Source of the DNA: Perkinsela sp. CCAP 1560/9
Lineage: Eukaryota; Protista; Euglenozoa: Kinetoplastea
DNA: 64,000 nucleotides
Direction: 5' to 3'
NCBI GenBank assembly: GCA_965644495.1
Contig: CBFFSA010000014.1
Location: 124,001 to 188,000, forward strand
In this document: piece by piece, positions 2,185 through 49,354 of the stretch
How positions within the stretch are numbered: the stretch's first letter is position 1
Layout of the letters: the number at the start of each line of letters is the position of its first letter
Notes under the pieces: model-generated
Databases searched by the model: none
Told to the model about the DNA's origin: nothing
Seen by the model: only the letters and a program-made list of their open reading frames with translations
Position numbers and translations under genes: made by a program

Positions 2185-2324
2185 AGAAAAAAATACACAA
2201 AAAATAATTTTTTGATGTTCATGCGCTCGTTGGCGCAGAGATACAGCCCTTGATGCGACAGCCGATATCATCGGCACAATCCGTATTGACGGATGTCGCA
2301 CCAAGGGGGTTTAGCTCGGACTCT

Positions 2325-2543
2325 GTCGGTAGAGGGGGTCCAGGCAACTCGCCCTCTCTTTACGCAGCCGGAGGGGCGCACTGCAACCGACTCGGTCCCA
2401 GTCGGTAGAGGTGGTCCAGGCAACTCACCACCTCTTTACGCAGCCGGAGAGGCGCACTGCAACCGACTCGGTCCCAGTCGGTAGAGGTGGTCCAGGCAAC
2501 TCACCACCTCTTTACGCAGCCGGAGGGGCGCACTGCAACCGAC
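2325..2543. repeat. 76-nt tandem repeat, 3 units
   Basis: Units GTCGGTAGAGGTGGTCCAGGCAACTCACCACCTCTTTACGCAGCCGGAGGGGCGCACTGCAACCGACTCGGTCCCA start at 2325, 2401 and 2477. Confidence 0.95.
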
Positions 2544-2833
2544 CGCTGCCTCGCGATAAGACGAGGCAGAGCCACGCCCAGTGGTGCTCAAGGGAGGCCA
2601 CCATGGCGCATGGCTCCCCGGGAAGGAAAGGGCGCGAAGGGAAGAAAGCCGGGGAGGGAAGAAAACCCACTCAAGGAGTGAACCGGGGAGGGGCGATGGG
2701 GTGGAAGCGCGTCCCCTACTTCGCCGAGAAAGAGGGACAGTTTCGGCCTTAGTGCCGGCCGGCAGCGGGCATATAACAGTAAGACTATGCCCGTTGCCGG
2801 GGAAAGAAAAGATGAACTAAAGGGAAAATGTAC

Positions 2834-2861
2834 CAACAAGGTACAGAAACTGTATCTTTAT
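2834..2861 (-). other. Spliced-leader (mini-exon) 3' segment
   Basis: Minus strand reads ATAAAGATACAGTTTCTGTACCTTGTTG|GTAC. It contains the kinetoplastid SL core GATACAGTTTCTGTAC with the terminal TTG at the correct spacing. Confidence 0.85.
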
Positions 2862-3209
2862 TTGAAGAGTATGAGGCAAATAAACGAGATGCAGCGCACC
2901 TTCGATTTTACCAAGGCCCAAGAAAGCGTTTTTAGCTTTGGGAAAAAGTTCCACTTCATTAATGAATCTTCCCATGTACTTAAAAACGGAGGGATTCGGA
3001 TCCCATTCGAATGGTTTCTTCCAGTTTAGCTCCGATACTTCGCCTCTTTCATTGCACTTCACGTAAGCCCACTCACAGGCTGGGGTACTACTCTTCCATG
3101 ACGGATGCGGATTCGTAATATCTTGCACAAGATCCGCAAGTTCTAGTTCTTGTGGGCGATTCGCAGAACTTACCTTAGCGACACGAGGCGTGACTTCTGG
3201 AACATCCAT
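2862..3209 (-). pseudogene. LRR-family gene truncated by the SL-headed element
   Basis: Family N-cap PQE..L...HPSW....ACEWAYVKCNERGEV..LNW and first repeat LPHTLQ, after which the sequence switches abruptly into the SL. Confidence 0.8.
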
Positions 3210-3743
3210 GAGATAGAATAAATAAAAGAAGGGGTAATCTAATATTAGTATATTATATAGGGGTGTTGTATTATCCAAAAGAAGTGCTGTGTAGAAAGTA
3301 TACATACAGTGATGTTGAGCGGCATTTCTCGCTTTACAGATCGTGAATGTTCTTTGATCTCGAAGATATTTTGTGTACAACCGTTTTTCGATCCCAGCGT
3401 TCCATATCCGCTGTCCTTTTCACTCCAGTGAGTGACTTACACAAAGTGTAACAAACACAGAAAATAGGGTTATACATTTAGATGTGTTGACGCCTGGGCT
3501 CAATGATGCGAATTACGTCCCGCTTGCAGTCAAGCAGTCAAGAGGATTTTGCAAGCTTACTTCGATCTTGTTTCTTAAAAATTAGAATTGAGAATATTAT
3601 AAAATTTGAAAGATTCGATCAAAATAAAAGTTAGCCCCCGAACCCCGTAGCGCACGAAGATTTAATGATTCCTACATTTTGGGAAAAATAGGCGGTTAAA
3701 TCTTTTTGGAAGCGAAACATCCCCTGGTCATAATATTATCAAA

Positions 3744-10554: not shown

Positions 10555-11182
10555 TACACGAACGAATAGTTGAAAAAATGAACCGAAGTTCAGTAGATTC
10601 TGCTTAGAAATGTGTACCGCGAAAACTATCGCTTGGAAAGCTTTCAATAAAAATGTATACTCATCAATGTAGATCAAGAGGTCCTACAAAAAAATAGTAT
10701 TTCCCAGTTTTTGTTGATGCCCTGGACTTAGCTCCGAGTAAATTAAGCATCATGAGCACAGCTAAACATTTTTCGCTTCCATGTGTAAGTAAAATTATGT
10801 TTCGTATATACACTGTATATTATAATGTGTACCTGGTTGGGCATAATGCATGTATCGGCTCTCCACGTGAATAAGAAGTACATAGTGTATATAATGAAGT
10901 GAATAAGAAGCAATTCCCTATGAACACACCAAAAAGAAAAAAAAACTAAATGGAAGATATTATTTTTTAGGAATAGTAGGAATTGCAAGACTTACTTTGT
11001 ATCTTATCTCCCTCGCCCTACGTGGCTGAGTTTTAAACAAAATAGCATTGCAAGCGTAATGTACATCCGCGTTGTATATCGCAATGTATCCGCGCTCCCC
11101 TTTAAATAAGGGCAGAACGATGGTAGTGATTATAAGTCGTTGAATAAATGATAATTTCATAAAACGACTGATATGTGCTTGG

Positions 11183-34192: not shown

Positions 34193-34629
34193 AGGCAGGG
34201 TGAGAAGAAAGGGGAAAGATAGTTTTGAAGATAAAGGTAGTTAGAGGTAAAGCTACTTTAGAGGTAGTAAAGGTAGTTAGAGTTAAAGGAAAGGGTATTT
34301 AAAGGAGAGAAGGACTTTTTTCAGTAGTCGAACATTTTTCAAAAAAAGTTCCCAAAGGGTTGACTATGGTTACGTCAACAGGAGTTATCCTCCGTCCGAA
34401 TTGGAAGGATGTGTCTGGGCCTCGACCGTTGTCGAATCTGTAGGTTCGTAAAGGTCGGGGGAGAATCCGTATTGGATTAGGAGGTTACGAAAGGTCTCCT
34501 TGACTATCTTGTGGTGGGAGGCTTGCCCCGGACCTTCTTGCAGTCCAGTGCGTGGACGCAGAACCCCTCATTTCATACCTTTTGTTTCATTGAACCAAAT
34601 CTATTTTGGGCTAGTTGAGTGGTTAATTG

Positions 34630-34975: not shown

Positions 34976-37900
34976 CATCTCCTTAGTACGGATAGTACGT
35001 ACTAAGTACCGTATTATCCGTACTAAGTACGAAAGTCCGTACTTTTTTGAAAAATATTTTATGCCAAAGTGGGACCTTGACTACGAATTTCAATTAAAGA
35101 AAAGCTCATCTTTTTCATTGGAAAACAATGTTGGGATCGCATTACTTAAACTAATTTATTATTCCGTTACTTATAGCATTTTCTTTTTAATTTTCATTCA
35201 CTTTTCTCCAGCACCATGTCTAGGAAGTCAGACCGAGGTGAACAGGATGGAAGCGAGGTAACTCCCGAAAGAACGGTCTCTCGCACTCATCACGCAACGC
35301 CGTCTAGCGTTCTACGCGAGAGGGGGCGGTTCCCCTTTTTGCTGTCGTACGTTACTCGGCAAAATTTCATCACGACCATGATGCAATGCCCGTTGACGGT
35401 ATGGGGCATGAATGTCATTACAAATGCATGGCCCCTGGCTGCCATTTTGAATCTCATTGCAAGACTCGTAATCATTATTAACAACACCGTAAGCACTGCG
35501 ATCTTCGAATTGATAAGGAGAAACTTGACGCTGTTCAAATGGCTATGTCGTGTGAAAGGGAAACCGAACTTTACGCCACACGAATAGTACCCAGCATGCA
35601 CGCTCTCATGAGCACTCCTTCTCAGCAATTTCTTACTTTTGTTCGGTCGCTCCTGGAGCAATGGCCTCCAAAGGCTACCATTGAACAGTTTCTAGCCTTT
35701 TTCCCCAAAAAGACCGGAAAATTTCACGAATGTGAATCTGTTCTCGCCGATGAGTTATGGGAAATTTTCAAGTCGGACATAAGTGTACATACTTTGGGGC
35801 TTCCGTTGACGCTGGTATCGATCGGATGAAGGAGAACATATACTATTATGTGTGGTATATGTCGGCCCTGAGGAATATGTTCTTCCCCCTATGTACTCGC
35901 CTCAGTACAAGGCATTTGACGGGAAGCTCATGGCTGAAACCCTGGTGAACAGTATGACGATCAACATCGGATGTGAACGACTGAAAAAATTAAAGTTTTT
36001 AATGGTTGATGGAAGTGCTGTAAATCATGTAGCTCGCTTGTATTGCGAGGGACATTTCCGTGACATCTATGAGAAGACAGATTACATTGGAGTTTACAGA
36101 TGAAGGCAAAGACAAAGATTTTACAGAGTAACCACCCTCTCATTGGACTAATTTAGGGTGGTTTTTCGTAGTATTAAACTAAAATTTATGGAATCTTGTA
36201 ATACTATTCGAATGTATTGTTTTTGAATATGTTGAAATCATTGAGTGATCAAGGTGGAAGATGGGACTTTAAGGACAATATTTCATGCGGCATTAACTAT
36301 ATTATTCCATGGGCGATAACTGAAATTGATGTATGATGTTGATTGCGTACCTTTGTAAAAATATACAGCATTCTATACAGGGGGGGTCACGAAAAGAGTG
36401 GGGGGTCTAAAATTTGTACCGTGCGAGCTTTTAACCTAATTCCTTCGGCATTCAACAGATCTCGAAATTTTAAGACTACGTGAGTTATAACTACTTAGGC
36501 ATATAAGGTTGAGTGATAATGGTGAGTCGGCAAAAATAGGTTTTTTTGTTTTTTGCATATTTGGATTTTCTCATTATTTCATTATTGATCCCCCGTTTTT
36601 TTCTCGAAGAAGTCTGATTCGGGACGGGAAGCTCGTCAAAGTATTATTATACGATGCTTTCATATCAGATAATAGATAATCAAGCGCTTTTGGAATTGCA
36701 GCTTGTAGTTCCTTACGGTTTGTGGGGCGGAGAGTAAATTTTATGTGGTGATCCATCATGCTCCACAAATTTTCAATTAAATTTAAATCCGGCGACTTGG
36801 CAGGCCAATCAAGAATGCTGATACCCATGTCTCTGCCGACGCGGCGAGCGTGATTATGGCCCGGAGCGTTATCCATGATCACTGTTGCCGCTGGTTTACG
36901 CTTTAACCAGTTGTAGAAACCATTTCGTTTTGTCATGGCAGAGAGAAACGTTTCATTAGTGACCGTCTCATTCTCCGCAAACTCATGAAAACAGTGAACC
37001 TTGGGAACCCCCCATTCAAGGCTCACCGCCATCCAAATATGAACCCCCTTTCCTCCGAAATATTTCTCAACATCTTTTGGTACCTCAAGGGGTTCATCTG
37101 ACCTTTTGCAAATGTACCAAATATTGCGTGAGTGGTACCCGCATTTAAAAATCTTTTCATCCGTCCACAGAATACGGGCGTATTGAAAAGGGGTGAACCT
37201 CTCCAAACGATTTGCCAACTCCAGGCGGTCGAATTTGTGCTGAGGCGTGAGATGAGGAACTTTCCTCATTTTTCTGCTTATGTACCCGCTCCTTTTCAGT
37301 GATCTTTTCACAGACGAAAGAGAGCATGGGTACTTGGTTTGATCGAAGATGGACAGCCAATGGGACTACGTTGATTTTCTTCATCTACAATAGATTCTAA
37401 TATTATTCGAAACTCTTCATTATGAATCGCATTCTTACGTATGTATTTTATACGTTCTAACCCTCCTGTCTCCCGGTGGCGTTTAACCCATCGAGAGACA
37501 GTTGCTTCACTGCATTTCATAAGAGCAACAGTGTCTGTAATCGAACGTCCCTGGTTTTGTACCTCATGGACGCAAATTACACGTGTTTCATAAGTGATTT
37601 GTTGCGTCGAGAGGGTGCGCCTCTGGCGGCGAAGTGTTTTTGGCATAAAATATGTGTTAGAAAGAGTTAAGTGGTATTTTATTCATAGATTAATGGGCTA
37701 AAATGATAAAAAATGATAAAAATCCGATTTTTTGCAGAATTTTCAGGTAAAAAATTCAGTAAAATTTTATCATGACGTCATATCAGCTTCAGGGGCGGCA
37801 ACAATGGTGCCAGTAGTCTTAAAATTTCGAGATCTGTTCAATGCCGAAGGAATTAGGTCAAAAGCTCGCACGGTACAAATTTTAGACCCCCCACCTTTTT

Positions 37901-38360
37901 CGTGCCCCCCCCTGTATATTCAATGAAAATAGCTTCTAAAAGTTCTTAGATCACTTTCACTTTTCCTTTCCGTTCTCTTATACATTTTTTGGGCGGGTGT
38001 CGGCGATCACCTATTTGTTAGTTCATAGCAAGTGAGAAAATAGTGATAAATATAGAGTGTCTTTTGATTCAAATTTTTATGCCTTCACCGTATGCTTCTT
38101 CTATATTCCTTTTAAATTACTTCTATAATTGCTTTTATTTAGTGAGTGTTAGCATGTATGCCCTTCATGACAGAGGTTGCAGCCCTTCAGCGTCACATGG
38201 TACACTACTTCAGTGTGGTTTCTTTATTTGAAATTGTTAGACAAACTGCATGAAGTACGGACTTTCGTACTAAGTACGGATAGTACGGTACCTAGTACGT
38301 ACTAGTACGAAATACGGGGTCCGTACTACGTTTAGTACGAAGTTCCGTACTGCGGAGATG
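34976..38360 (+). mobile_element. Decayed hAT-like DDE transposon with GTAC-rich TIRs, interrupted by a Tc1-like element
   Basis: Ends CATCTCC..AGTACGGA are inverted, with AGTACG arrays. Broken ORF 35360-36103 has a CMAPGC...HRKHC finger, FGASVDAG and FLMVDGSAVN. Confidence 0.6.
36378..37914 (-). mobile_element. Tc1-like transposon, D,D32E transposase with one frameshift (37308-37646 plus 36574-37311)
   Basis: TA|CAGGGGGG ~100-bp TIRs; HTH, WTDEK, MDNAPGH and WPAKSPDLNLIE. Confidence 0.92.
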
Positions 38361-38452: not shown

Positions 38453-39060
38453 TTGACGTGTCAGCTCCTCCGAGTGGACCCGGACAACGTTTTCGCACCC
38501 AACCTCCAACGCGCCGTTTATCCCATGTGGACGGAAACAACGTGGACTACTCGAGAGCGAATTTGGACGTTCCTCAATCAGTTTTGCGACCAAAGGCGCA
38601 TTCAACTGACGGCGTTGCACGTAATTTTATTTCTCGATTCCCTGGATGTCGCAGTAAAGGCGCACCTCACGTACGCACGGGGTCTCCATACGATTTACAC
38701 ACACATGAGCGAAGACAACACATCACTACAGATCTATGCGAAGGCGCTACAAGCGCAGGGAGGGTTGGAACCCCAACGGCGAATGGAGCCGCTAACTCCG
38801 TATTCGCTCCAGAAACTGTGCAGCAGTATCACGTACTCACAAGCAATGGCTGTGTTGCTATGTTGGAAAGCGGCGGCTCGGTGGACCGAATGCGCCGAAT
38901 TATGCCGCAAGAAATTCTTCAGCGTGTCGCCCATGGAAATAGTGATTTACTGGGGAAGAACCACAAAATTGACTCGACTCAATCCTTATCGCCCGTACAT
39001 AAATGCAGTAATCACGGGTCCGGGGACGCCGGAATTACCGTTACCATTTGGGCGCCCAAC
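38453..39060 (+). mobile_element. Tyrosine-recombinase fragment of a TATE/VIPER-like retroelement
   Basis: YAKALQAQGG..P...EPL, LLCWKAAARWTE (catalytic Arg) and TTKLTRLNPY; C-terminal HxxR/Y missing. Confidence 0.65.
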
Positions 39061-39248
39061 GCATTTTCTGCGTGGGGGCGGCCTTTTCTCCTGGGACAAC
39101 TCACATCTTTTGATGTGTATCATTCGTATTAACATACATTGTTGTTCTGAGAATAAGAACACGTTCTGGTTCTCAGAACCAAAGAACACTGTTTTCAGAA
39201 CGTCGAGAACACGTGGATTTAACTCAGCGGTCGTCATCTCCTCTTGAG

Positions 39249-39274
39249 AAAGATACAGTTTCTGTACCTTGTTG
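39249..39274 (+). other. Spliced-leader 3' segment at the 5' end of a LINE
   Basis: AAAGATACAGTTTCTGTACCTTGTTG, identical to 2834-2859 reverse-complemented. It is followed by AATT (no GT donor), a 39-nt UTR and ATG at 39314. Confidence 0.85.
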
Positions 39275-42200
39275 AATTATTTTCAATTTTGTACTAAACT
39301 TATCTCTCGGAGCATGTCCTCCAATGTTATCACATCTGCTCCCGACGCGCACGACGGCCTCCCTCGAGGACCTGTCAGCGCGAGGCAACAGAATTTCCAC
39401 TTCATCCAGAGTCGCGCGGTACCAGTGAAACTTCGACTCGCTTCAAGCGTTCAGTGGTCATATTTTCCGGATGCACACGCCGCGGCTGTCTTTCTTACCG
39501 ATAAGAAGTTCTTCTCGAGTGTACACACTGCCGAAGCTTCCCTAAACAAGACTCTAAAAACAGAGAACAAAAGAAGTGACGGGCTAGTCGTCGATAAATG
39601 CACAGTACAGAATGTTATGGACCATGGCGCATGCGAATACCTGGAATATAAAGAGAAGAAACCACCTCACCGCACTTTCCGCCACGCCAGCTGGACGTCC
39701 GCTTTTCACGACTCGGAGATGTGTCTCGACTCGCATTATTCGTCTCCCCAAAACTTAAGCAAGGCAGTGATGAAAAAACTAAACGGCGACAATGTCCCTG
39801 GACTGTCCCAGTATGAAATAAAACATGTAGCGCGAAGCACTGAGTCCACAAACGGGACTTGGCTACAACATCAAATCATCTACGATGCTGCATACAGGAT
39901 TCGGGAACAGCCAACAGGACCGGAAACCTCATCACAACCTACAAAGCCACGTCAACCATGCAACCACAAATGTCGCGACAAAAACTCATGCCTGCATGCG
40001 TGCTGTAAAGTCACCGCCGTGGTTAATCCGCCCACAGAAGCTACCGCCGTGGGACCGAATAGTACGGAAAGGGAGGCACCACTTGTCACAACAACGAACT
40101 CCATCCGTCACCATACGAATACGGAGACGCGAAGACCTTGCAAGCACACCTGTCGCGACAAAACAAAATGTCTACACAGTTGTTGCAAAATCGGTGTGCT
40201 CGTATCCAAAGACGAACTGATGGTACACCACGACTTGCATTCCGCACAGCCTCCAATGGATCAACCGGTTACACATACGAACTTTACCCCTGCCCACTCG
40301 ATCGATGCCCTCCCCGATATGACGACGATCACATGCACGAACACGGAAAATCGCATACACGCACATGCAATAGAAACTAACAGCTCGGAAAGGAGTCTCG
40401 CAAGACCAACACGACTTATGCCCCACACACAACCACCGCCACAAGGGAGCAACAGCGATCCTAACGCAACAGAGACGGCCAACCGGGACAACTACCGTCC
40501 ATGCAAGCATCAGTGTGGCAATAAGACTCTATGTAAGCACAAATGTTGCAAGGAGGGAGTCCGCATCAGTCCAACGGCGAATAGAAACCACTCATGGTCA
40601 TTGCGAAATCTAATTCCGTGGACATCGGCTTCCACGGATGTAACCGAAATTCCCACAGCAGAGACGCCAACCACGCGAACGGAGACCACGGAAGGGACCA
40701 TGGGAGAAATTCCACTTCCCAACACCCAGCCTCCCGGCACCGCCCCCAACGAACCGTCCCCCAGTAACGAAAATGACGTATCACGAGACGCAAGACCACG
40801 TCGTCCCTACAAGCATAAGTGTAAAGATAAATCGCAATACCAACACGCCTGCTGCCAAAAAGGCGCGCTCGTGAGAGCTGGAGAAATCGCCTGCTCTGCA
40901 ATATCCTGGACTGTACGAAACCTCCTTATACTCGATAGACCGACCCAACCGACCGCACTGCCTGCCCCCCAGGAAGTTCAACCATCCTCACAACCTGAGC
41001 CCCTCGCCGACCGCTTTCCAACAACCCCCGTCTCAGATTCTCCCCCGCATCCTGCAAACGCCGCACTGTCTACTGAACGACGCCCAGATCCGATCTCAGA
41101 CCGCTCATACCACTACGGTGCCCACACTATATTCCAACGAACCCCACGAACAAACGCATCGCATACCACACCACCCTGTCCACGCTCGGAGCTCGAGAGT
41201 TTGCTTGAAACATTCCGCACCATTCAAGGTGGACGTGCCCTGGTGCACTTTGACACTAGCCAATGGGATCTCACCATCTCAAGAATTGAAGGACGTTGCA
41301 ATGCATTCATGCACCCTCCTCGAAGTAAAGAAGACGCACTGTTCCAAGCTGAAGTCATCTCTGCCATCTTGGCTGTATCCGTCTACGAAACTGCGAAAGA
41401 GATTAACCCCACACGCGGGTTTCTACTTCGAACCCGAACAGGCAGGTCCAAACGTAGCTCACGCCCCCTTGCCATCGACCGTACCGTCAAGTCATTAAAT
41501 CTACACGTTCGTCAATTAAAACGATCACTGACCTTTATGCACGGCCCAGAGCGAAATGCCCAAAGAGGGAGGATAAAAGATAGATGGACCCACCATTGCC
41601 GCAGCCATATCATCAAAACGTTCGGGGGCCGCTCCGGGGTCAGATACCATAACCAACATCTTGTTAAAGCGTTGCCCTTCCATCTACTCGGTCGTCGCGC
41701 AGGTATTCAACGACATACTCAAATTCGGCGTATGCCCGCCGACATGGAAAACGGCCGTCACCCGACTGATCCACAAAGGAGGCGACACTAAACTCATGGA
41801 AAACTGGCGCCCAATTAGTCTTACCAGCTGTCTCGGGAAACTTTTTCACTCAATCATAAGTCATCGCATCCTCCGCCACGCCCTCGATTCTCACGCCATA
41901 GACACGTCGATACAAAAAGGTTTTCTCCCCCACATGAATGGTACTGTAGAGCACACTCAAGTTTTATGTGAACTCCTCGAATACCAAAGACGCCACAAAC
42001 GACAATACTGCCTAGCACAGTTCGACATCAAAAATGCTTTCGGGTCCGTACCCCATACTGTGCTGTTACAGGCTCTAAAATGGGCGCGCGTATCTCCAAT
42101 TATCGTTCAATACATAGAACAACTCTACGAGAAAGCATCCATCCAAATCAAGTGCGCTGAAGGTCTTACAAAACCCATCTCGATAGATCGAGGTGTATTG

Positions 42201-42610
42201 CAGGGCGACACTCTCTCCCCCATACTATTCAATCTTGCAATGGAGTTGGTTCTGCGTTTCGTTCGATCAAGCTGCCCACAATATGGGATCACATGGGATG
42301 ACAAAGAGACCTTTCTCAAAGCCTTCGCCGACGACCTTACCATCATTACGAATACCCCCAGGGAAATGCAAAATGCCACCAATGTCCTTGGAAAAGGCCT
42401 TTCCGACATTGGGATGAACCTCAACGTTAAAAAGTGCCGAATTCAGCACATGTCAATGACGCAAGACTCGGGTTATATGACTCGGCGTCCTCAGCTCACG
42501 ATCAATGGAGCTCCGATTCCCCAGATATGCGACAAAGGAAGCACCTTCTTAGGGATGACGCTTGCTCCAGGTGCACAACAAGGCAAGATTCTCTTCCAGA
42601 AAGGTAAAGT
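39249..42610 (+). mobile_element. Non-LTR retrotransposon (RLE-type, HERO/NeSL-like RT), internally deleted and 3'-truncated
   Basis: ORF from 39314 with four CxHxCxxKxxCxHxCCK motifs. RT frame from ~41585: APGSD, WRPISLT, IDTSIQKGF, FDIKNAFGSVPH, GVLQGDTLSP, AFADDL, FLG. Confidence 0.88.
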
Positions 42611-43276
42611 AACTAATCAGATAAACATTATTATCCCCCTTTTGGAAGACGGTACCTGGATTTCACCATGAAAAAAATTTCTTGTCAGATGTTTTTAAAA
42701 AATATGTAGCTTTTTTTCATTTTTTTAAAGACAGCTAAAAATATCGGGAACGTGTAGATCTCGAAATTGTGAACGAAAAAGTGCTATCATAACCTCCCTA
42801 GGCTCCTTCATGCAAAAAAATAGGGGGGGGGGGTGATTTATTCGTGTCCCGGGGTTTATACGTTTTGTACATAATCGTTTTTGTACATATTTTTGTACAT
42901 AATTCATAAGCCAGTTTTTCTTAACTGACTATGGGTCAGGAGCATTGTTGGAAATCTGTGATATGAGTCAGATCCTTTGACAATGTTGGGGCTTAGCGAC
43001 CCCCTCCTTTCCAGCTACGTCCACAGCAACGTTTATACTTTAATTTTTGTCGTAACTGAGTCTTTCTGTGGTTTTACTCGGTGTTATCTAAAACCTCGGT
43101 ACAATTATCCATGGATTTCACTCTACGCGCGCTATGAAGTCTAGTCAATTTTTTTTAGAAAACAAAACAACAGCAACTTATGACTTCTTTAGCAAGTATT
43201 ACTTGCTAAGACTATTACTTAGTAAGATGTATGCTTTATTTGCGTGTCGTACACCATTATTTTTCATTTTAATCTA

Positions 43277-43596
43277 CCGTATACCCCCCCCCAATAAGGT
43301 ACCCCCCCAGTAAGAGAGATTTGGCCTTTTTTGGGCTGACCCGCAGTAAGAGAGATTTGGCTTGGGAGCCCAACAGGAGGAGTATAGGGGGTAGGGGGTG
43401 GGTGTCTGCATGTTGGGGGCCTCGGGGGTAGCCCAAATAAGAGTTTTAACACGTTTTCAGAAGAAAAAATAGAAAAAATAGTCAAAAAAATTGGGAGAAA
43501 AGAGGAAACTGGCCAAAAAAGGTTACCCCCCTCAGTAAGAGAGATTTGGCCATTTTGACCCAAAACCCATTCTCTTACTGGGGGGGGGGTATACGG
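43277..43596. mobile_element. Tc2/pogo-like MITE
   Basis: TA|CCGTATACCCCCC ... GGGGGGTATACGG|TA; CAGTAAGAGAGATTTGGC three times. Confidence 0.85.
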
Positions 43597-43601
43597 TATT
43601 A

Positions 43602-49052: not shown

Positions 49053-49354
49053 TTTTTTGATGTTCATGCTCTCGTTGGCGCAGAGATAAATCCCTTGATG
49101 CGACAGCCGATATCATCGGCACAATCCGTAATGACGGATGTCGCACCAAGGGGATTAGCACGGAATCTGTCGGTAGAGGGGGTCCAGGCAACCCACCCTC
49201 TATTTACGCAGCCGGAGGGGCGTACTGCAACCGACTCGGTCCCAGTCGGTAGAGGTGGTCCAGGCAACTCACCACCTCTTTACGCAGCCGGAGGGGCGCA
49301 CTGCAACCTACCGCTGCCTCGCGATAAGACGAGGCAGAGCCACGCCCAGTGGTG
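49053..49354 (-). mobile_element. Second, 5'-truncated copy of the structured SINE-like element (two 76-nt units)
   Basis: Colinear with 2208-2586; same A6 end; units at 49169 and 49245. Confidence 0.85.

What the first reader, a model, noticed from the sequence alone, without database searches (positions are those of the whole stretch)
39249..39316. The same SL 26-mer caps an unrelated LINE: retroposition of trans-spliced RNA
Seen: AAAGATACAGTTTCTGTACCTTGTTG, 26/26 identical to the SINE head, lies 39 nt before the LINE ATG and is followed by AATT rather than a GT donor, which is the layout of a mature mRNA. Both SL copies lack the first third or so of a 39-nt SL. Known: CRE/SLACS/CZAR insert into SL genes, but this RT is not CRE-like, and cap-4 methylation impedes reverse transcription near the SL 5' end. 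Inference: this LINE propagates through SL-trans-spliced transcripts and may be the enzyme mobilising the SL-SINE, forming a LINE/SINE pair that uses host trans-splicing in place of an internal promoter or ribozyme.
Basis: partly seen in the sequence, partly recalled or inferred. Interest (0 to 1): 0.85.

Follow-up and report, generated by a model that had tools for sequence, protein, structure and literature searches.

The report
Retrotransposon headed by spliced-leader relic
A broken jumping gene of the R2/CRE type in this kinetoplastid genome starts with a DNA copy of the last 26 letters of the cell's own mRNA leader. This indicates it was copied back from leader-tagged RNA, a habit known from dinoflagellate genes; I found no report of it for kinetoplastid mobile elements.

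Summary
The 26-mer occurs twice in the window, at 39249-39274 (+) and 2834-2859 (-), against none in shuffles. It lies 39 nt before the LINE ATG and is followed by AATT. It is the 3' two thirds of the host spliced leader (SL): true SL genes elsewhere in the genome carry it followed by a GTATGAG intron.

The LINE is a dead copy of a 4985-bp element, with a 290-bp internal deletion and the last 1347 bp missing. Four other copies at unrelated sites carry the SL at the same joint, and none has SL intron on its 3' side. One sister copy has a 26-28-nt head followed by a 16-nt SL relic that starts just after the AG inside the SL. That is the footprint expected from a second round of trans-splicing and copying.

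- The enzyme is R2/CRE-like: it has a CCHC knuckle and a restriction-like endonuclease.
- Cap-4 does not explain the truncation, because other retroelement families keep 36-38 nt of SL.
- The LINE/SINE link rests on a shared 3' box (TCTCT, hairpin, ATGA) found across the whole LINE clade, not on this family alone.

How the head is renewed, and why it starts near SL nt 12, stays open. The scan has reported SL-headed elements before in other windows of this genome.

The parts
39249..39274 (+). SL relic: the last 26 nt of the host spliced-leader exon, forming the first bases of the LINE copy
   Evidence: Exact match to the SL gene exon. It ends at the exon's last base.
39275..39313 (+). 39-nt 5' UTR: AATTATTTTC start, TACTAA box, pyrimidine run, and an AG one base before the ATG
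   Evidence: The same UTR occurs in sister copies and in 60-73% related families.
39249..42602 (+). Whole LINE remnant: element positions 1-2323 and 2614-3638 of a 4985-bp element
   Evidence: blastn against the C9 copy, 98% identity.
39314..41579 (+). N-terminal part of the single ORF, with four Cys/His motifs at 39959-40006, 40139-40186, 40502-40549 and 40808-40855 (the last one degraded)
   Evidence: No Pfam family matched.
41579..41580 (+). Break point of a 290-bp internal deletion, which shifts the reading frame
41769..42557 (+). Reverse transcriptase domain (RVT_1)
   Evidence: Pfam E = 6e-33. The best solved relatives are R2 proteins.
42602..42603 (+). 3' truncation point. The last 1347 bp (end of RT, CCHC, endonuclease, 3' box) are absent from the window
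2210..2861 (-). SL-headed SINE, 652 bp, with a 28-nt SL head at 2834-2861 followed by GTAC
2207..2250 (-). SINE 3' terminal box (TCTCT, 4-bp hairpin, ATGA), shared with the LINE clade
49053..49354 (-). Second copy of the same SINE, 5'-truncated and without a head

Best explanation
The 26-mer is a DNA copy of SL nt 14-39 that heads a dead copy of a roughly 5-kb non-LTR retrotransposon of the restriction-like-endonuclease (R2/CRE) type. Shown: the SL piece is part of the inserted element. It sits at the same joint in five copies at unrelated sites and in at least six related families, and it always ends at the exon's last base. Inferred: the copies were reverse-transcribed from element RNA that had received the SL by trans-splicing, and the DNA copy regularly begins about 11-14 nt inside the SL. 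Headed copies can be transcribed from outside, spliced again at an AG inside the old head, and copied again. One sister copy carries such a 16-nt relic under a new head of the usual length, which suggests the head length is set afresh at each round. The SL-headed SINEs use the same clade's machinery, since they share the 28-nt head and the 3' terminal hairpin box. Not explained: where the SL is added to give the TTG|AATT joint (most likely in a headless source copy with an AG just upstream), and what makes the copy start near SL nt 12.
For: - The 26-mer occurs 493 times in the 21-Mb genome (up to 1 mismatch), against only 7 loci with SL intron.
- In the copies read here, the SL heads the element at the same joint, in unrelated flanks, with no SL intron on the 3' side: window, C9, C7, L077, L081.
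- Head length in the LINE clade is 25-29 nt, n = 14, across families down to 40% protein identity. The head matches the SL exactly or with one mismatch, while the adjacent UTRs differ.
- L081, 99% identical to this family, carries a 26-28-nt head, then a 16-nt relic starting after the internal AG, then the normal UTR.
- Genome-wide there are 8 sites with that 16-nt relic and 2 with the 22-nt relic that follows the other internal AG.
- All 7 SL-intron loci have an intact exon/intron joint.
- The 3' box shows covariation: 96.9% of cells paired against 65.6% in shuffles, with 0 of 500 shuffles reaching the observed value.
Against: - The genomic joint TTG|AATT has no AG, so a headed copy cannot regain the same joint by canonical trans-splicing.
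- No headless source copy of this family was found: a 44-nt UTR pattern with up to 3 mismatches hit only headed copies.
- Head length is specific to the element type (25-29 nt here, 32-38 nt in other retroelements), which also fits a head inherited as part of the element.
- The 16-nt relic could formally be a tandem duplication. A different kind of tandem head piece, not ending at the exon end, exists in L084.
- Four of the five family copies are broken. L081 keeps one long ORF despite an in-frame 336-bp deletion.
Confidence: 0.68

Rival explanations
1. Captured once and inherited. An ancestor of the clade picked up the last 28 nt of the SL by one retroposition event. Since then the head has been ordinary element sequence, kept by selection as part of a 5' structure or start signal. 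Element RNA begins at its first base through an internal start site or self-processing.
For: Head length is fixed by element type: 25-29 nt in the LINE clade and a mode of 28 in the SINEs (7 of the 11 read; 54 copies genome-wide), against 32-38 nt in other elements. There is no AG at the joint. Three SINE copies share the same 6-nt duplication inside the head. SINE 5' regions fold with the head paired to downstream sequence, z = -5.8 and -6.9. In L084 the stuttered head pieces suggest that the RNA template really ended near SL nt 12-13.
Against: Across families that have diverged to 40% protein identity the head differs from the host SL by at most one base, while the neighbouring UTR changes freely. 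Two independent indels abut the head/UTR joint exactly: the C7 copy, and L024 versus L078. L081 has a new head over a relic. Two to four SINE copies have heads of at least 33 nt where about 0.05 would be expected by chance. No known ribozyme family matches.
Confidence: 0.22
2. SL-gene targeting, as in CRE, SLACS and CZAR: the SL piece is target DNA left beside an element that landed in an SL gene or in another element's SL tag.
For: The enzyme is of the CRE/R2 type. The 28-nt head starts at the very position (nt 11/12) where CZAR and SLACS insert in SL genes (PMC5814959). In L063 a LINE 3' end abuts a SINE head directly.
Against: The flanks upstream of the heads are unrelated to each other and are not element 3' ends, apart from that one case. 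No copy has SL nt 1-11 upstream or SL intron downstream. All 7 intron-bearing SL loci are uninterrupted at the exon end.
Confidence: 0.04
3. SL capture by the reverse transcriptase without trans-splicing of the element RNA. At the 5' end of the element RNA the enzyme jumps onto the 3' end of a free SL exon, the first-step splicing intermediate, or onto another SL-bearing RNA.
For: R2-type enzymes are known for end-to-end template jumps (established knowledge, not tested here). Stuttered head pieces (L084) and partial heads stacked upstream of full heads (L012, L030) show that template switching happens at these 5' ends. Some UTRs hold 11-14-nt stretches antisense to the SL that could hold an SL strand nearby.
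Against: It needs a rare RNA species as acceptor. It does not explain the relics that start exactly after AG. It does not predict a copy that stops at nt 12.
Confidence: 0.06

Closest known systems
Relict spliced leaders on dinoflagellate retrogenes (recycling of processed cDNAs; PMC6050394, PMC5585692, PMC12014239)
   Same: A DNA-encoded SL sits at the 5' end and ends at the exon boundary. Stacked truncated relics start after an AG inside the SL. Both are read as retroposition of trans-spliced RNA.
   Different: Here the tagged sequences are the mobile elements themselves (LINEs, SINEs and other retroelements) in a kinetoplastid. The LINE has no poly(A) tail. The head is regularly cut to the last 25-29 nt.
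CRE clade (CRE1/2, SLACS, CZAR) of trypanosomatids (PMC12278014, PMC5814959)
   Same: Single-ORF LINE with reverse transcriptase, a CCHC knuckle and a restriction-like endonuclease, with an intimate link to the SL sequence. The head starts at the SL position these elements cut (nt 11/12).
   Different: The copies are dispersed, not in SL genes. They carry the SL 3' part at their own 5' end instead of being flanked by both SL halves. There is no poly(A) tail. The N-terminus has four CxHxCx5CxHxCC motifs instead of C2H2 fingers. No phylogeny was done.
R2 elements and their non-autonomous partners; stringent LINE/SINE pairs sharing a 3' stem-loop
   Same: The best sequence and fold matches are to R2 proteins. 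The 3' end is a short conserved hairpin shared by LINEs and SINEs. Host-derived bases at the RNA 5' end recall R2 RNAs that keep 28S bases.
   Different: The element is not specific for rDNA. The host-derived 5' bases come from the SL, not from a co-transcribed target. No 5' ribozyme was detected.
Pr77 hallmark of ingi/L1Tc/NARTc/SIDER (PMC8190864, PMC5814959)
   Same: A short 5' module shared by autonomous and non-autonomous retroposons of kinetoplastids that solves 5' end formation under polycistronic transcription.
   Different: Pr77 is an element-encoded promoter and ribozyme, and its transcripts lack the SL. Here the shared module is the host SL itself.

Membership tests
Restriction-like-endonuclease (R2/CRE/NeSL-type) non-LTR retrotransposons | Reverse transcriptase followed by a CCHC knuckle and a PD-(D/E)xK endonuclease, with no N-terminal AP endonuclease | tested here: met
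   RVT_1. Invariant or nearly invariant C..C..H..C, RHD, RPD, E-L-T, K..Y in 10 relatives. The model (pLDDT 73) has seven top fold hits, all R2 proteins, E = 5.5e-6 to 1.6e-3. This was shown on sister copies, because the window copy has lost this part.
CRE clade (CRE1/2, SLACS, CZAR) | Site-specific insertion in SL RNA genes between SL nt 11 and 12 | tested here: not met
   Five copies lie in unrelated flanks with no SL halves around them. All SL-intron loci are intact at the exon end.
CRE clade (CRE1/2, SLACS, CZAR) | Poly(A) tail at the 3' end | tested here: not met
   All copies end in ...ATGATAATAT without an A run.
CRE clade (CRE1/2, SLACS, CZAR) | Groups with CRE1, SLACS and CZAR in a reverse transcriptase tree | not tested
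   No reference sequences could be obtained. The protein search returned no named trypanosomatid element.
SL-relic retrocopies (dinoflagellate type) | Genomic SL at the 5' end that stops at the exon's last base | tested here: met
   All 33 distinct heads sampled end at TTG.
SL-relic retrocopies (dinoflagellate type) | Stacked truncated relics that begin after an AG within the SL | tested here: met
   8 + 2 sites genome-wide, and one copy of this very family, L081. The window copy itself has a single head.
LINE/SINE partnership through a shared 3' end | SINE 3' terminus homologous to the LINE 3' terminus | tested here: met
   The box TCTCT, 4-bp stem, loop, stem, ATGA occurs in 10 LINE tails and 6 SINE tails. 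All 4 pairs show compensatory changes, and no shuffle or slid control comes near the observed value. It is met for the clade. This family is not the closest one.

The most novel reading that the evidence does not exclude
A whole clade of CRE/R2-type LINEs and their SINEs has given up living in SL genes and instead lets the host put the SL on its RNA. Each new DNA copy then starts at SL nt 12, the same bond that CRE-clade endonucleases cut in SL genes. This would mean the element's own SL-recognising protein trims or marks its SL-tagged RNA or cDNA at that point. An old target specificity would have been turned into a device for forming the 5' end.
Probability: 0.15. Interest if true: 0.85.

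Novelty: new variant of a known kind. Interest (0 to 1): 0.7.

Why it matters
Kinetoplastids transcribe polycistronically, so a mobile element has to find some way to obtain a defined, translatable 5' end. The known answers are to sit in an SL gene (the CRE clade) or to carry a promoter and ribozyme (Pr77). An element family that takes the host SL by trans-splicing and writes it back into DNA would be a third answer. It would also leave a datable tag on every insertion, and stacked relics would count rounds of copying. The tag gives a direct handle on the source-copy question, on which enzymes read how far into the capped SL, and on how CRE-type elements relate to their SL target. My literature searches found this described only for dinoflagellates.

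Tried and rejected
- Known RNA families: a gathering-threshold scan of the window found nothing. Permissive scans of the SINE and of the LINE 5' region found no ribozyme or SL family.
- Upstream ORF 38453-39247: I tested whether it is a recombinase element that landed in the SL tag. Its kin are only 72% alike, they stop at 39033, and 39034-39248 has no relative, so there is no sign of that.
- Direct 3' tail similarity between this LINE family and the SINE: a local alignment was not better than shuffles, with 58 of 1000 reaching the score.
- A 21-nt exact block shared by the SINE and the sequence after the L080 LINE tail looked like a partner signal. The sister copy L084 lacks it, so it is a local junction feature, not a family tail.
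- A head-to-UTR hairpin in this family appears in single-sequence folds but not in the alignment fold. One row of that alignment (L033) was given with wrong coordinates, so I make no claim.
- C-terminal domain against solved structures by sequence: no hit. The fold search was needed.
- Headless source copy: not found.
The ten relic sites and the two odd SL loci could therefore not be read.
- No consensus of the element was built.

Full report
OBSERVATION. The 26-mer is present exactly twice in the window, at 39249-39274 on the plus strand and 2834-2859 on the minus strand. None of 100 dinucleotide-preserving shuffles gave a match. The plus-strand copy is followed by AATT and, 39 nt later, by the ATG (39314) of a long ORF. 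The minus-strand copy is followed by GTAC and heads a 652-bp non-coding repeat.

WHAT THE 26-MER IS. The genome (21 Mb, 110 contigs) holds 493 copies of the 26-mer with at most one mismatch. Only seven loci continue into a typical kinetoplastid SL intron (GTATGAG...), and all seven have the exon/intron joint intact. Two of them lie 297 bp apart next to a 5S rRNA gene. They give the exon as 38-39 nt, and the 26-mer is its 3' end. The window LINE therefore keeps SL nt 14-39, and the SINE keeps nt 12-39.

THE LINE.
- Two more copies in the genome, on C9 and C7, are 98% identical. They define a 4985-bp element with no poly(A) tail, ending in ...ATGATAATAT.
- A public assembly of the same organism (ENA ERZ24900291) contains those two loci again (L082, L083) and two further copies (L077, L081).
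- The window copy covers element positions 1-2323 and 2614-3638. It has a 290-bp deletion at 41579/41580 and lacks the last 1347 bp.
- The protein has four CxHxCx5CxHxCC motifs with no Pfam match and an RVT_1 domain.
- In sister copies it also has a C-terminal block with the invariant CCHC, RHD, RPD, E and K residues of restriction-like endonucleases.
- The best solved relatives by sequence are R2 proteins, E = 1.5e-32. The top seven fold hits of the C-terminal model are all R2 proteins.
It nevertheless fails two defining CRE features, residence in SL genes and a poly(A) tail (PMC12278014). No tree with CRE references could be made.

DOES THE SL BELONG TO THE ELEMENT? Yes. All five copies of the family carry it at the same joint, in unrelated flanks, and none has SL intron or SL nt 1-11 beside it.
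- Head lengths in this family are 25 (C9), 26 (window), 26 (C7), 28 (L077) and 26-28 (L081).
- Related families, with 40-73% identity in the enzyme, have heads of 26-29 nt: L021/L063, L024, L078 (both strands), L079, L080, L085, and three more genomic copies.
- None of these 14 heads reaches 30 nt.

ONE ROUND OR MANY? The head always ends at the exon's last base, in all 33 distinct heads sampled. This is the mark of splicing.
- Genome-wide, 8 sites have the SL end joined to the 16 nt that follow the AG of ACAG inside the SL. Two sites have it joined to the 22 nt that follow the other internal AG.
- L081, a 99% copy of this very family with one long ORF, reads: flank, 26-28-nt head with one mismatch, 16-nt relic, then the normal UTR.
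- The simplest reading is that a headed copy was transcribed from outside, trans-spliced at the AG in its old head, and copied again.
- The new head again has the usual length although the spliced RNA must have carried a full SL. This argues that the length is set at each round.
- A plain 16-nt tandem duplication cannot be excluded. L084 shows that another kind of repetition exists: three stacked 11-nt head pieces that do not end at the exon end.

WHAT REMAINS OPEN.
- The joint TTG|AATT has no AG, so a headed copy cannot regain a single head by canonical splicing. A headless source copy with an AG before AATT would solve this. Relic-bearing heads are only about 2% of all heads, which would then be the second-generation copies. 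No such source was found.
- Two indels abut the joint exactly: C7 lacks the first 12 UTR bases, and L024 lacks 11-13 relative to L078. These hint that the joint is re-made.
- The start near SL nt 12 is not due to cap-4. Retroelements with LsmAD and RNase H ORFs keep 32-38 nt of SL, often right after a poly(A) run.
- The start coincides with the site where CZAR and SLACS cut SL genes (PMC5814959). This is a coincidence I could not test.
- No known ribozyme matches, and RNA reads were not available.

THE SINE.
- Fifty-four copies have the 26-mer followed by GTAC. The mode is a 28-nt head. Six copies have at least 30 nt, and two to four have at least 33 nt where about 0.05 would be expected by chance.
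- The tail of this LINE family is not significantly similar to the SINE tail in a plain alignment.
- However, the last 35 nt or so of 10 LINE tails from eight families and of 6 SINE tails share an invariant TCTCT, a 4-bp stem, a loop and an invariant ATGA.
- All four stem pairs show compensatory changes. 96.9% of cells are paired against 65.6% in shuffles, 23 cells have double changes against 6.8, no shuffle out of 500 reaches the observed value, and all slid controls are far lower.
- The SINEs are therefore partners of this LINE clade, sharing both ends. The driver family is not identified.

COMPARISON AND NOVELTY. DNA-encoded SL relics are well known on dinoflagellate retrogenes (PMC6050394, PMC5585692, PMC12014239). 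In kinetoplastids the known links between LINEs and the SL are insertion into SL genes (CRE clade) and SL-less Pr77 transcripts (PMC8190864). Three full-text searches found no report of SL-headed mobile elements in kinetoplastids. Earlier agents of this scan described the same phenomenon in other windows of this genome. Two points were re-tested here independently: their 3' hairpin and their statement that some copies were spliced and copied more than once.

Noticed in passing
window 36374-37918: A 1.55-kb element with terminal inverted repeats of about 105 bp. At least ten copies elsewhere are 95-97% identical. It is probably a DNA transposon or a non-autonomous derivative.
   Followed up: no
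window 38453-39247: A degenerate ORF directly upstream of the SL relic. By eye it resembles the start of a tyrosine recombinase. There is no Pfam hit, and relatives are only 72% alike at four loci.
   Followed up: partly
window 43274-43601: A repeat of about 325 bp with more than 40 copies at 86-94% identity, just downstream of the truncated LINE.
   Followed up: no
L007, L019, L027, L028, L029 (contig C1): Other retroelement families with near-full SL heads (36-38 nt), often directly after a poly(A) run. Their ORFs carry an LsmAD-like motif or an RNase H domain. In 13 of the 14 heads that reach that position, the base before CTTT reads T where SL genes have A or G.
   Followed up: partly
L064 (C1:659000-664000): Two SL RNA genes lie 297 bp apart next to a 5S rRNA gene. 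Only seven SL-intron loci exist in the whole assembly, so the SL arrays may be collapsed or missing.
   Followed up: partly
G000 C20 near 10936-10983 and C49 near 34378-34425: SL loci with the intron and SL nt 6-39 intact but a different first five bases. They may be interrupted or retrocopied SL genes. They were not read because no more genome DNA could be fetched.
   Followed up: no
L084:1890-1950: The 5' end of a related LINE shows three stacked 11-nt pieces of the head, each ending in ACAG, before the full head. This looks like repeated template switching at an RNA end near SL nt 12-13.
   Followed up: no
L078 minus strand and L079, 5' UTRs: Stretches of 14 and 11 nt exactly antisense to SL nt 7-20 lie between the head and the ATG (p <= 0.003 against shuffles). 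The SINE has an 8-nt antisense block at +90.
   Followed up: partly
L063:6540-6600: The 3' end of a 73% related LINE abuts the 28-nt head of a SINE with no spacer. It could be a chimeric copy or a targeted insertion.
   Followed up: partly
L080:7166-7186: An exact 21-nt block of the SINE interior follows the LINE 3' box and precedes a (TG)n run. It is absent from the sister copy L084.
   Followed up: yes
window 39959-40855: Four repeats of a CxHxCx5CxHxCC motif in the LINE N-terminus. No Pfam family matches. It may be the DNA- or RNA-binding part that replaces the zinc fingers of CRE and R2.
   Followed up: partly
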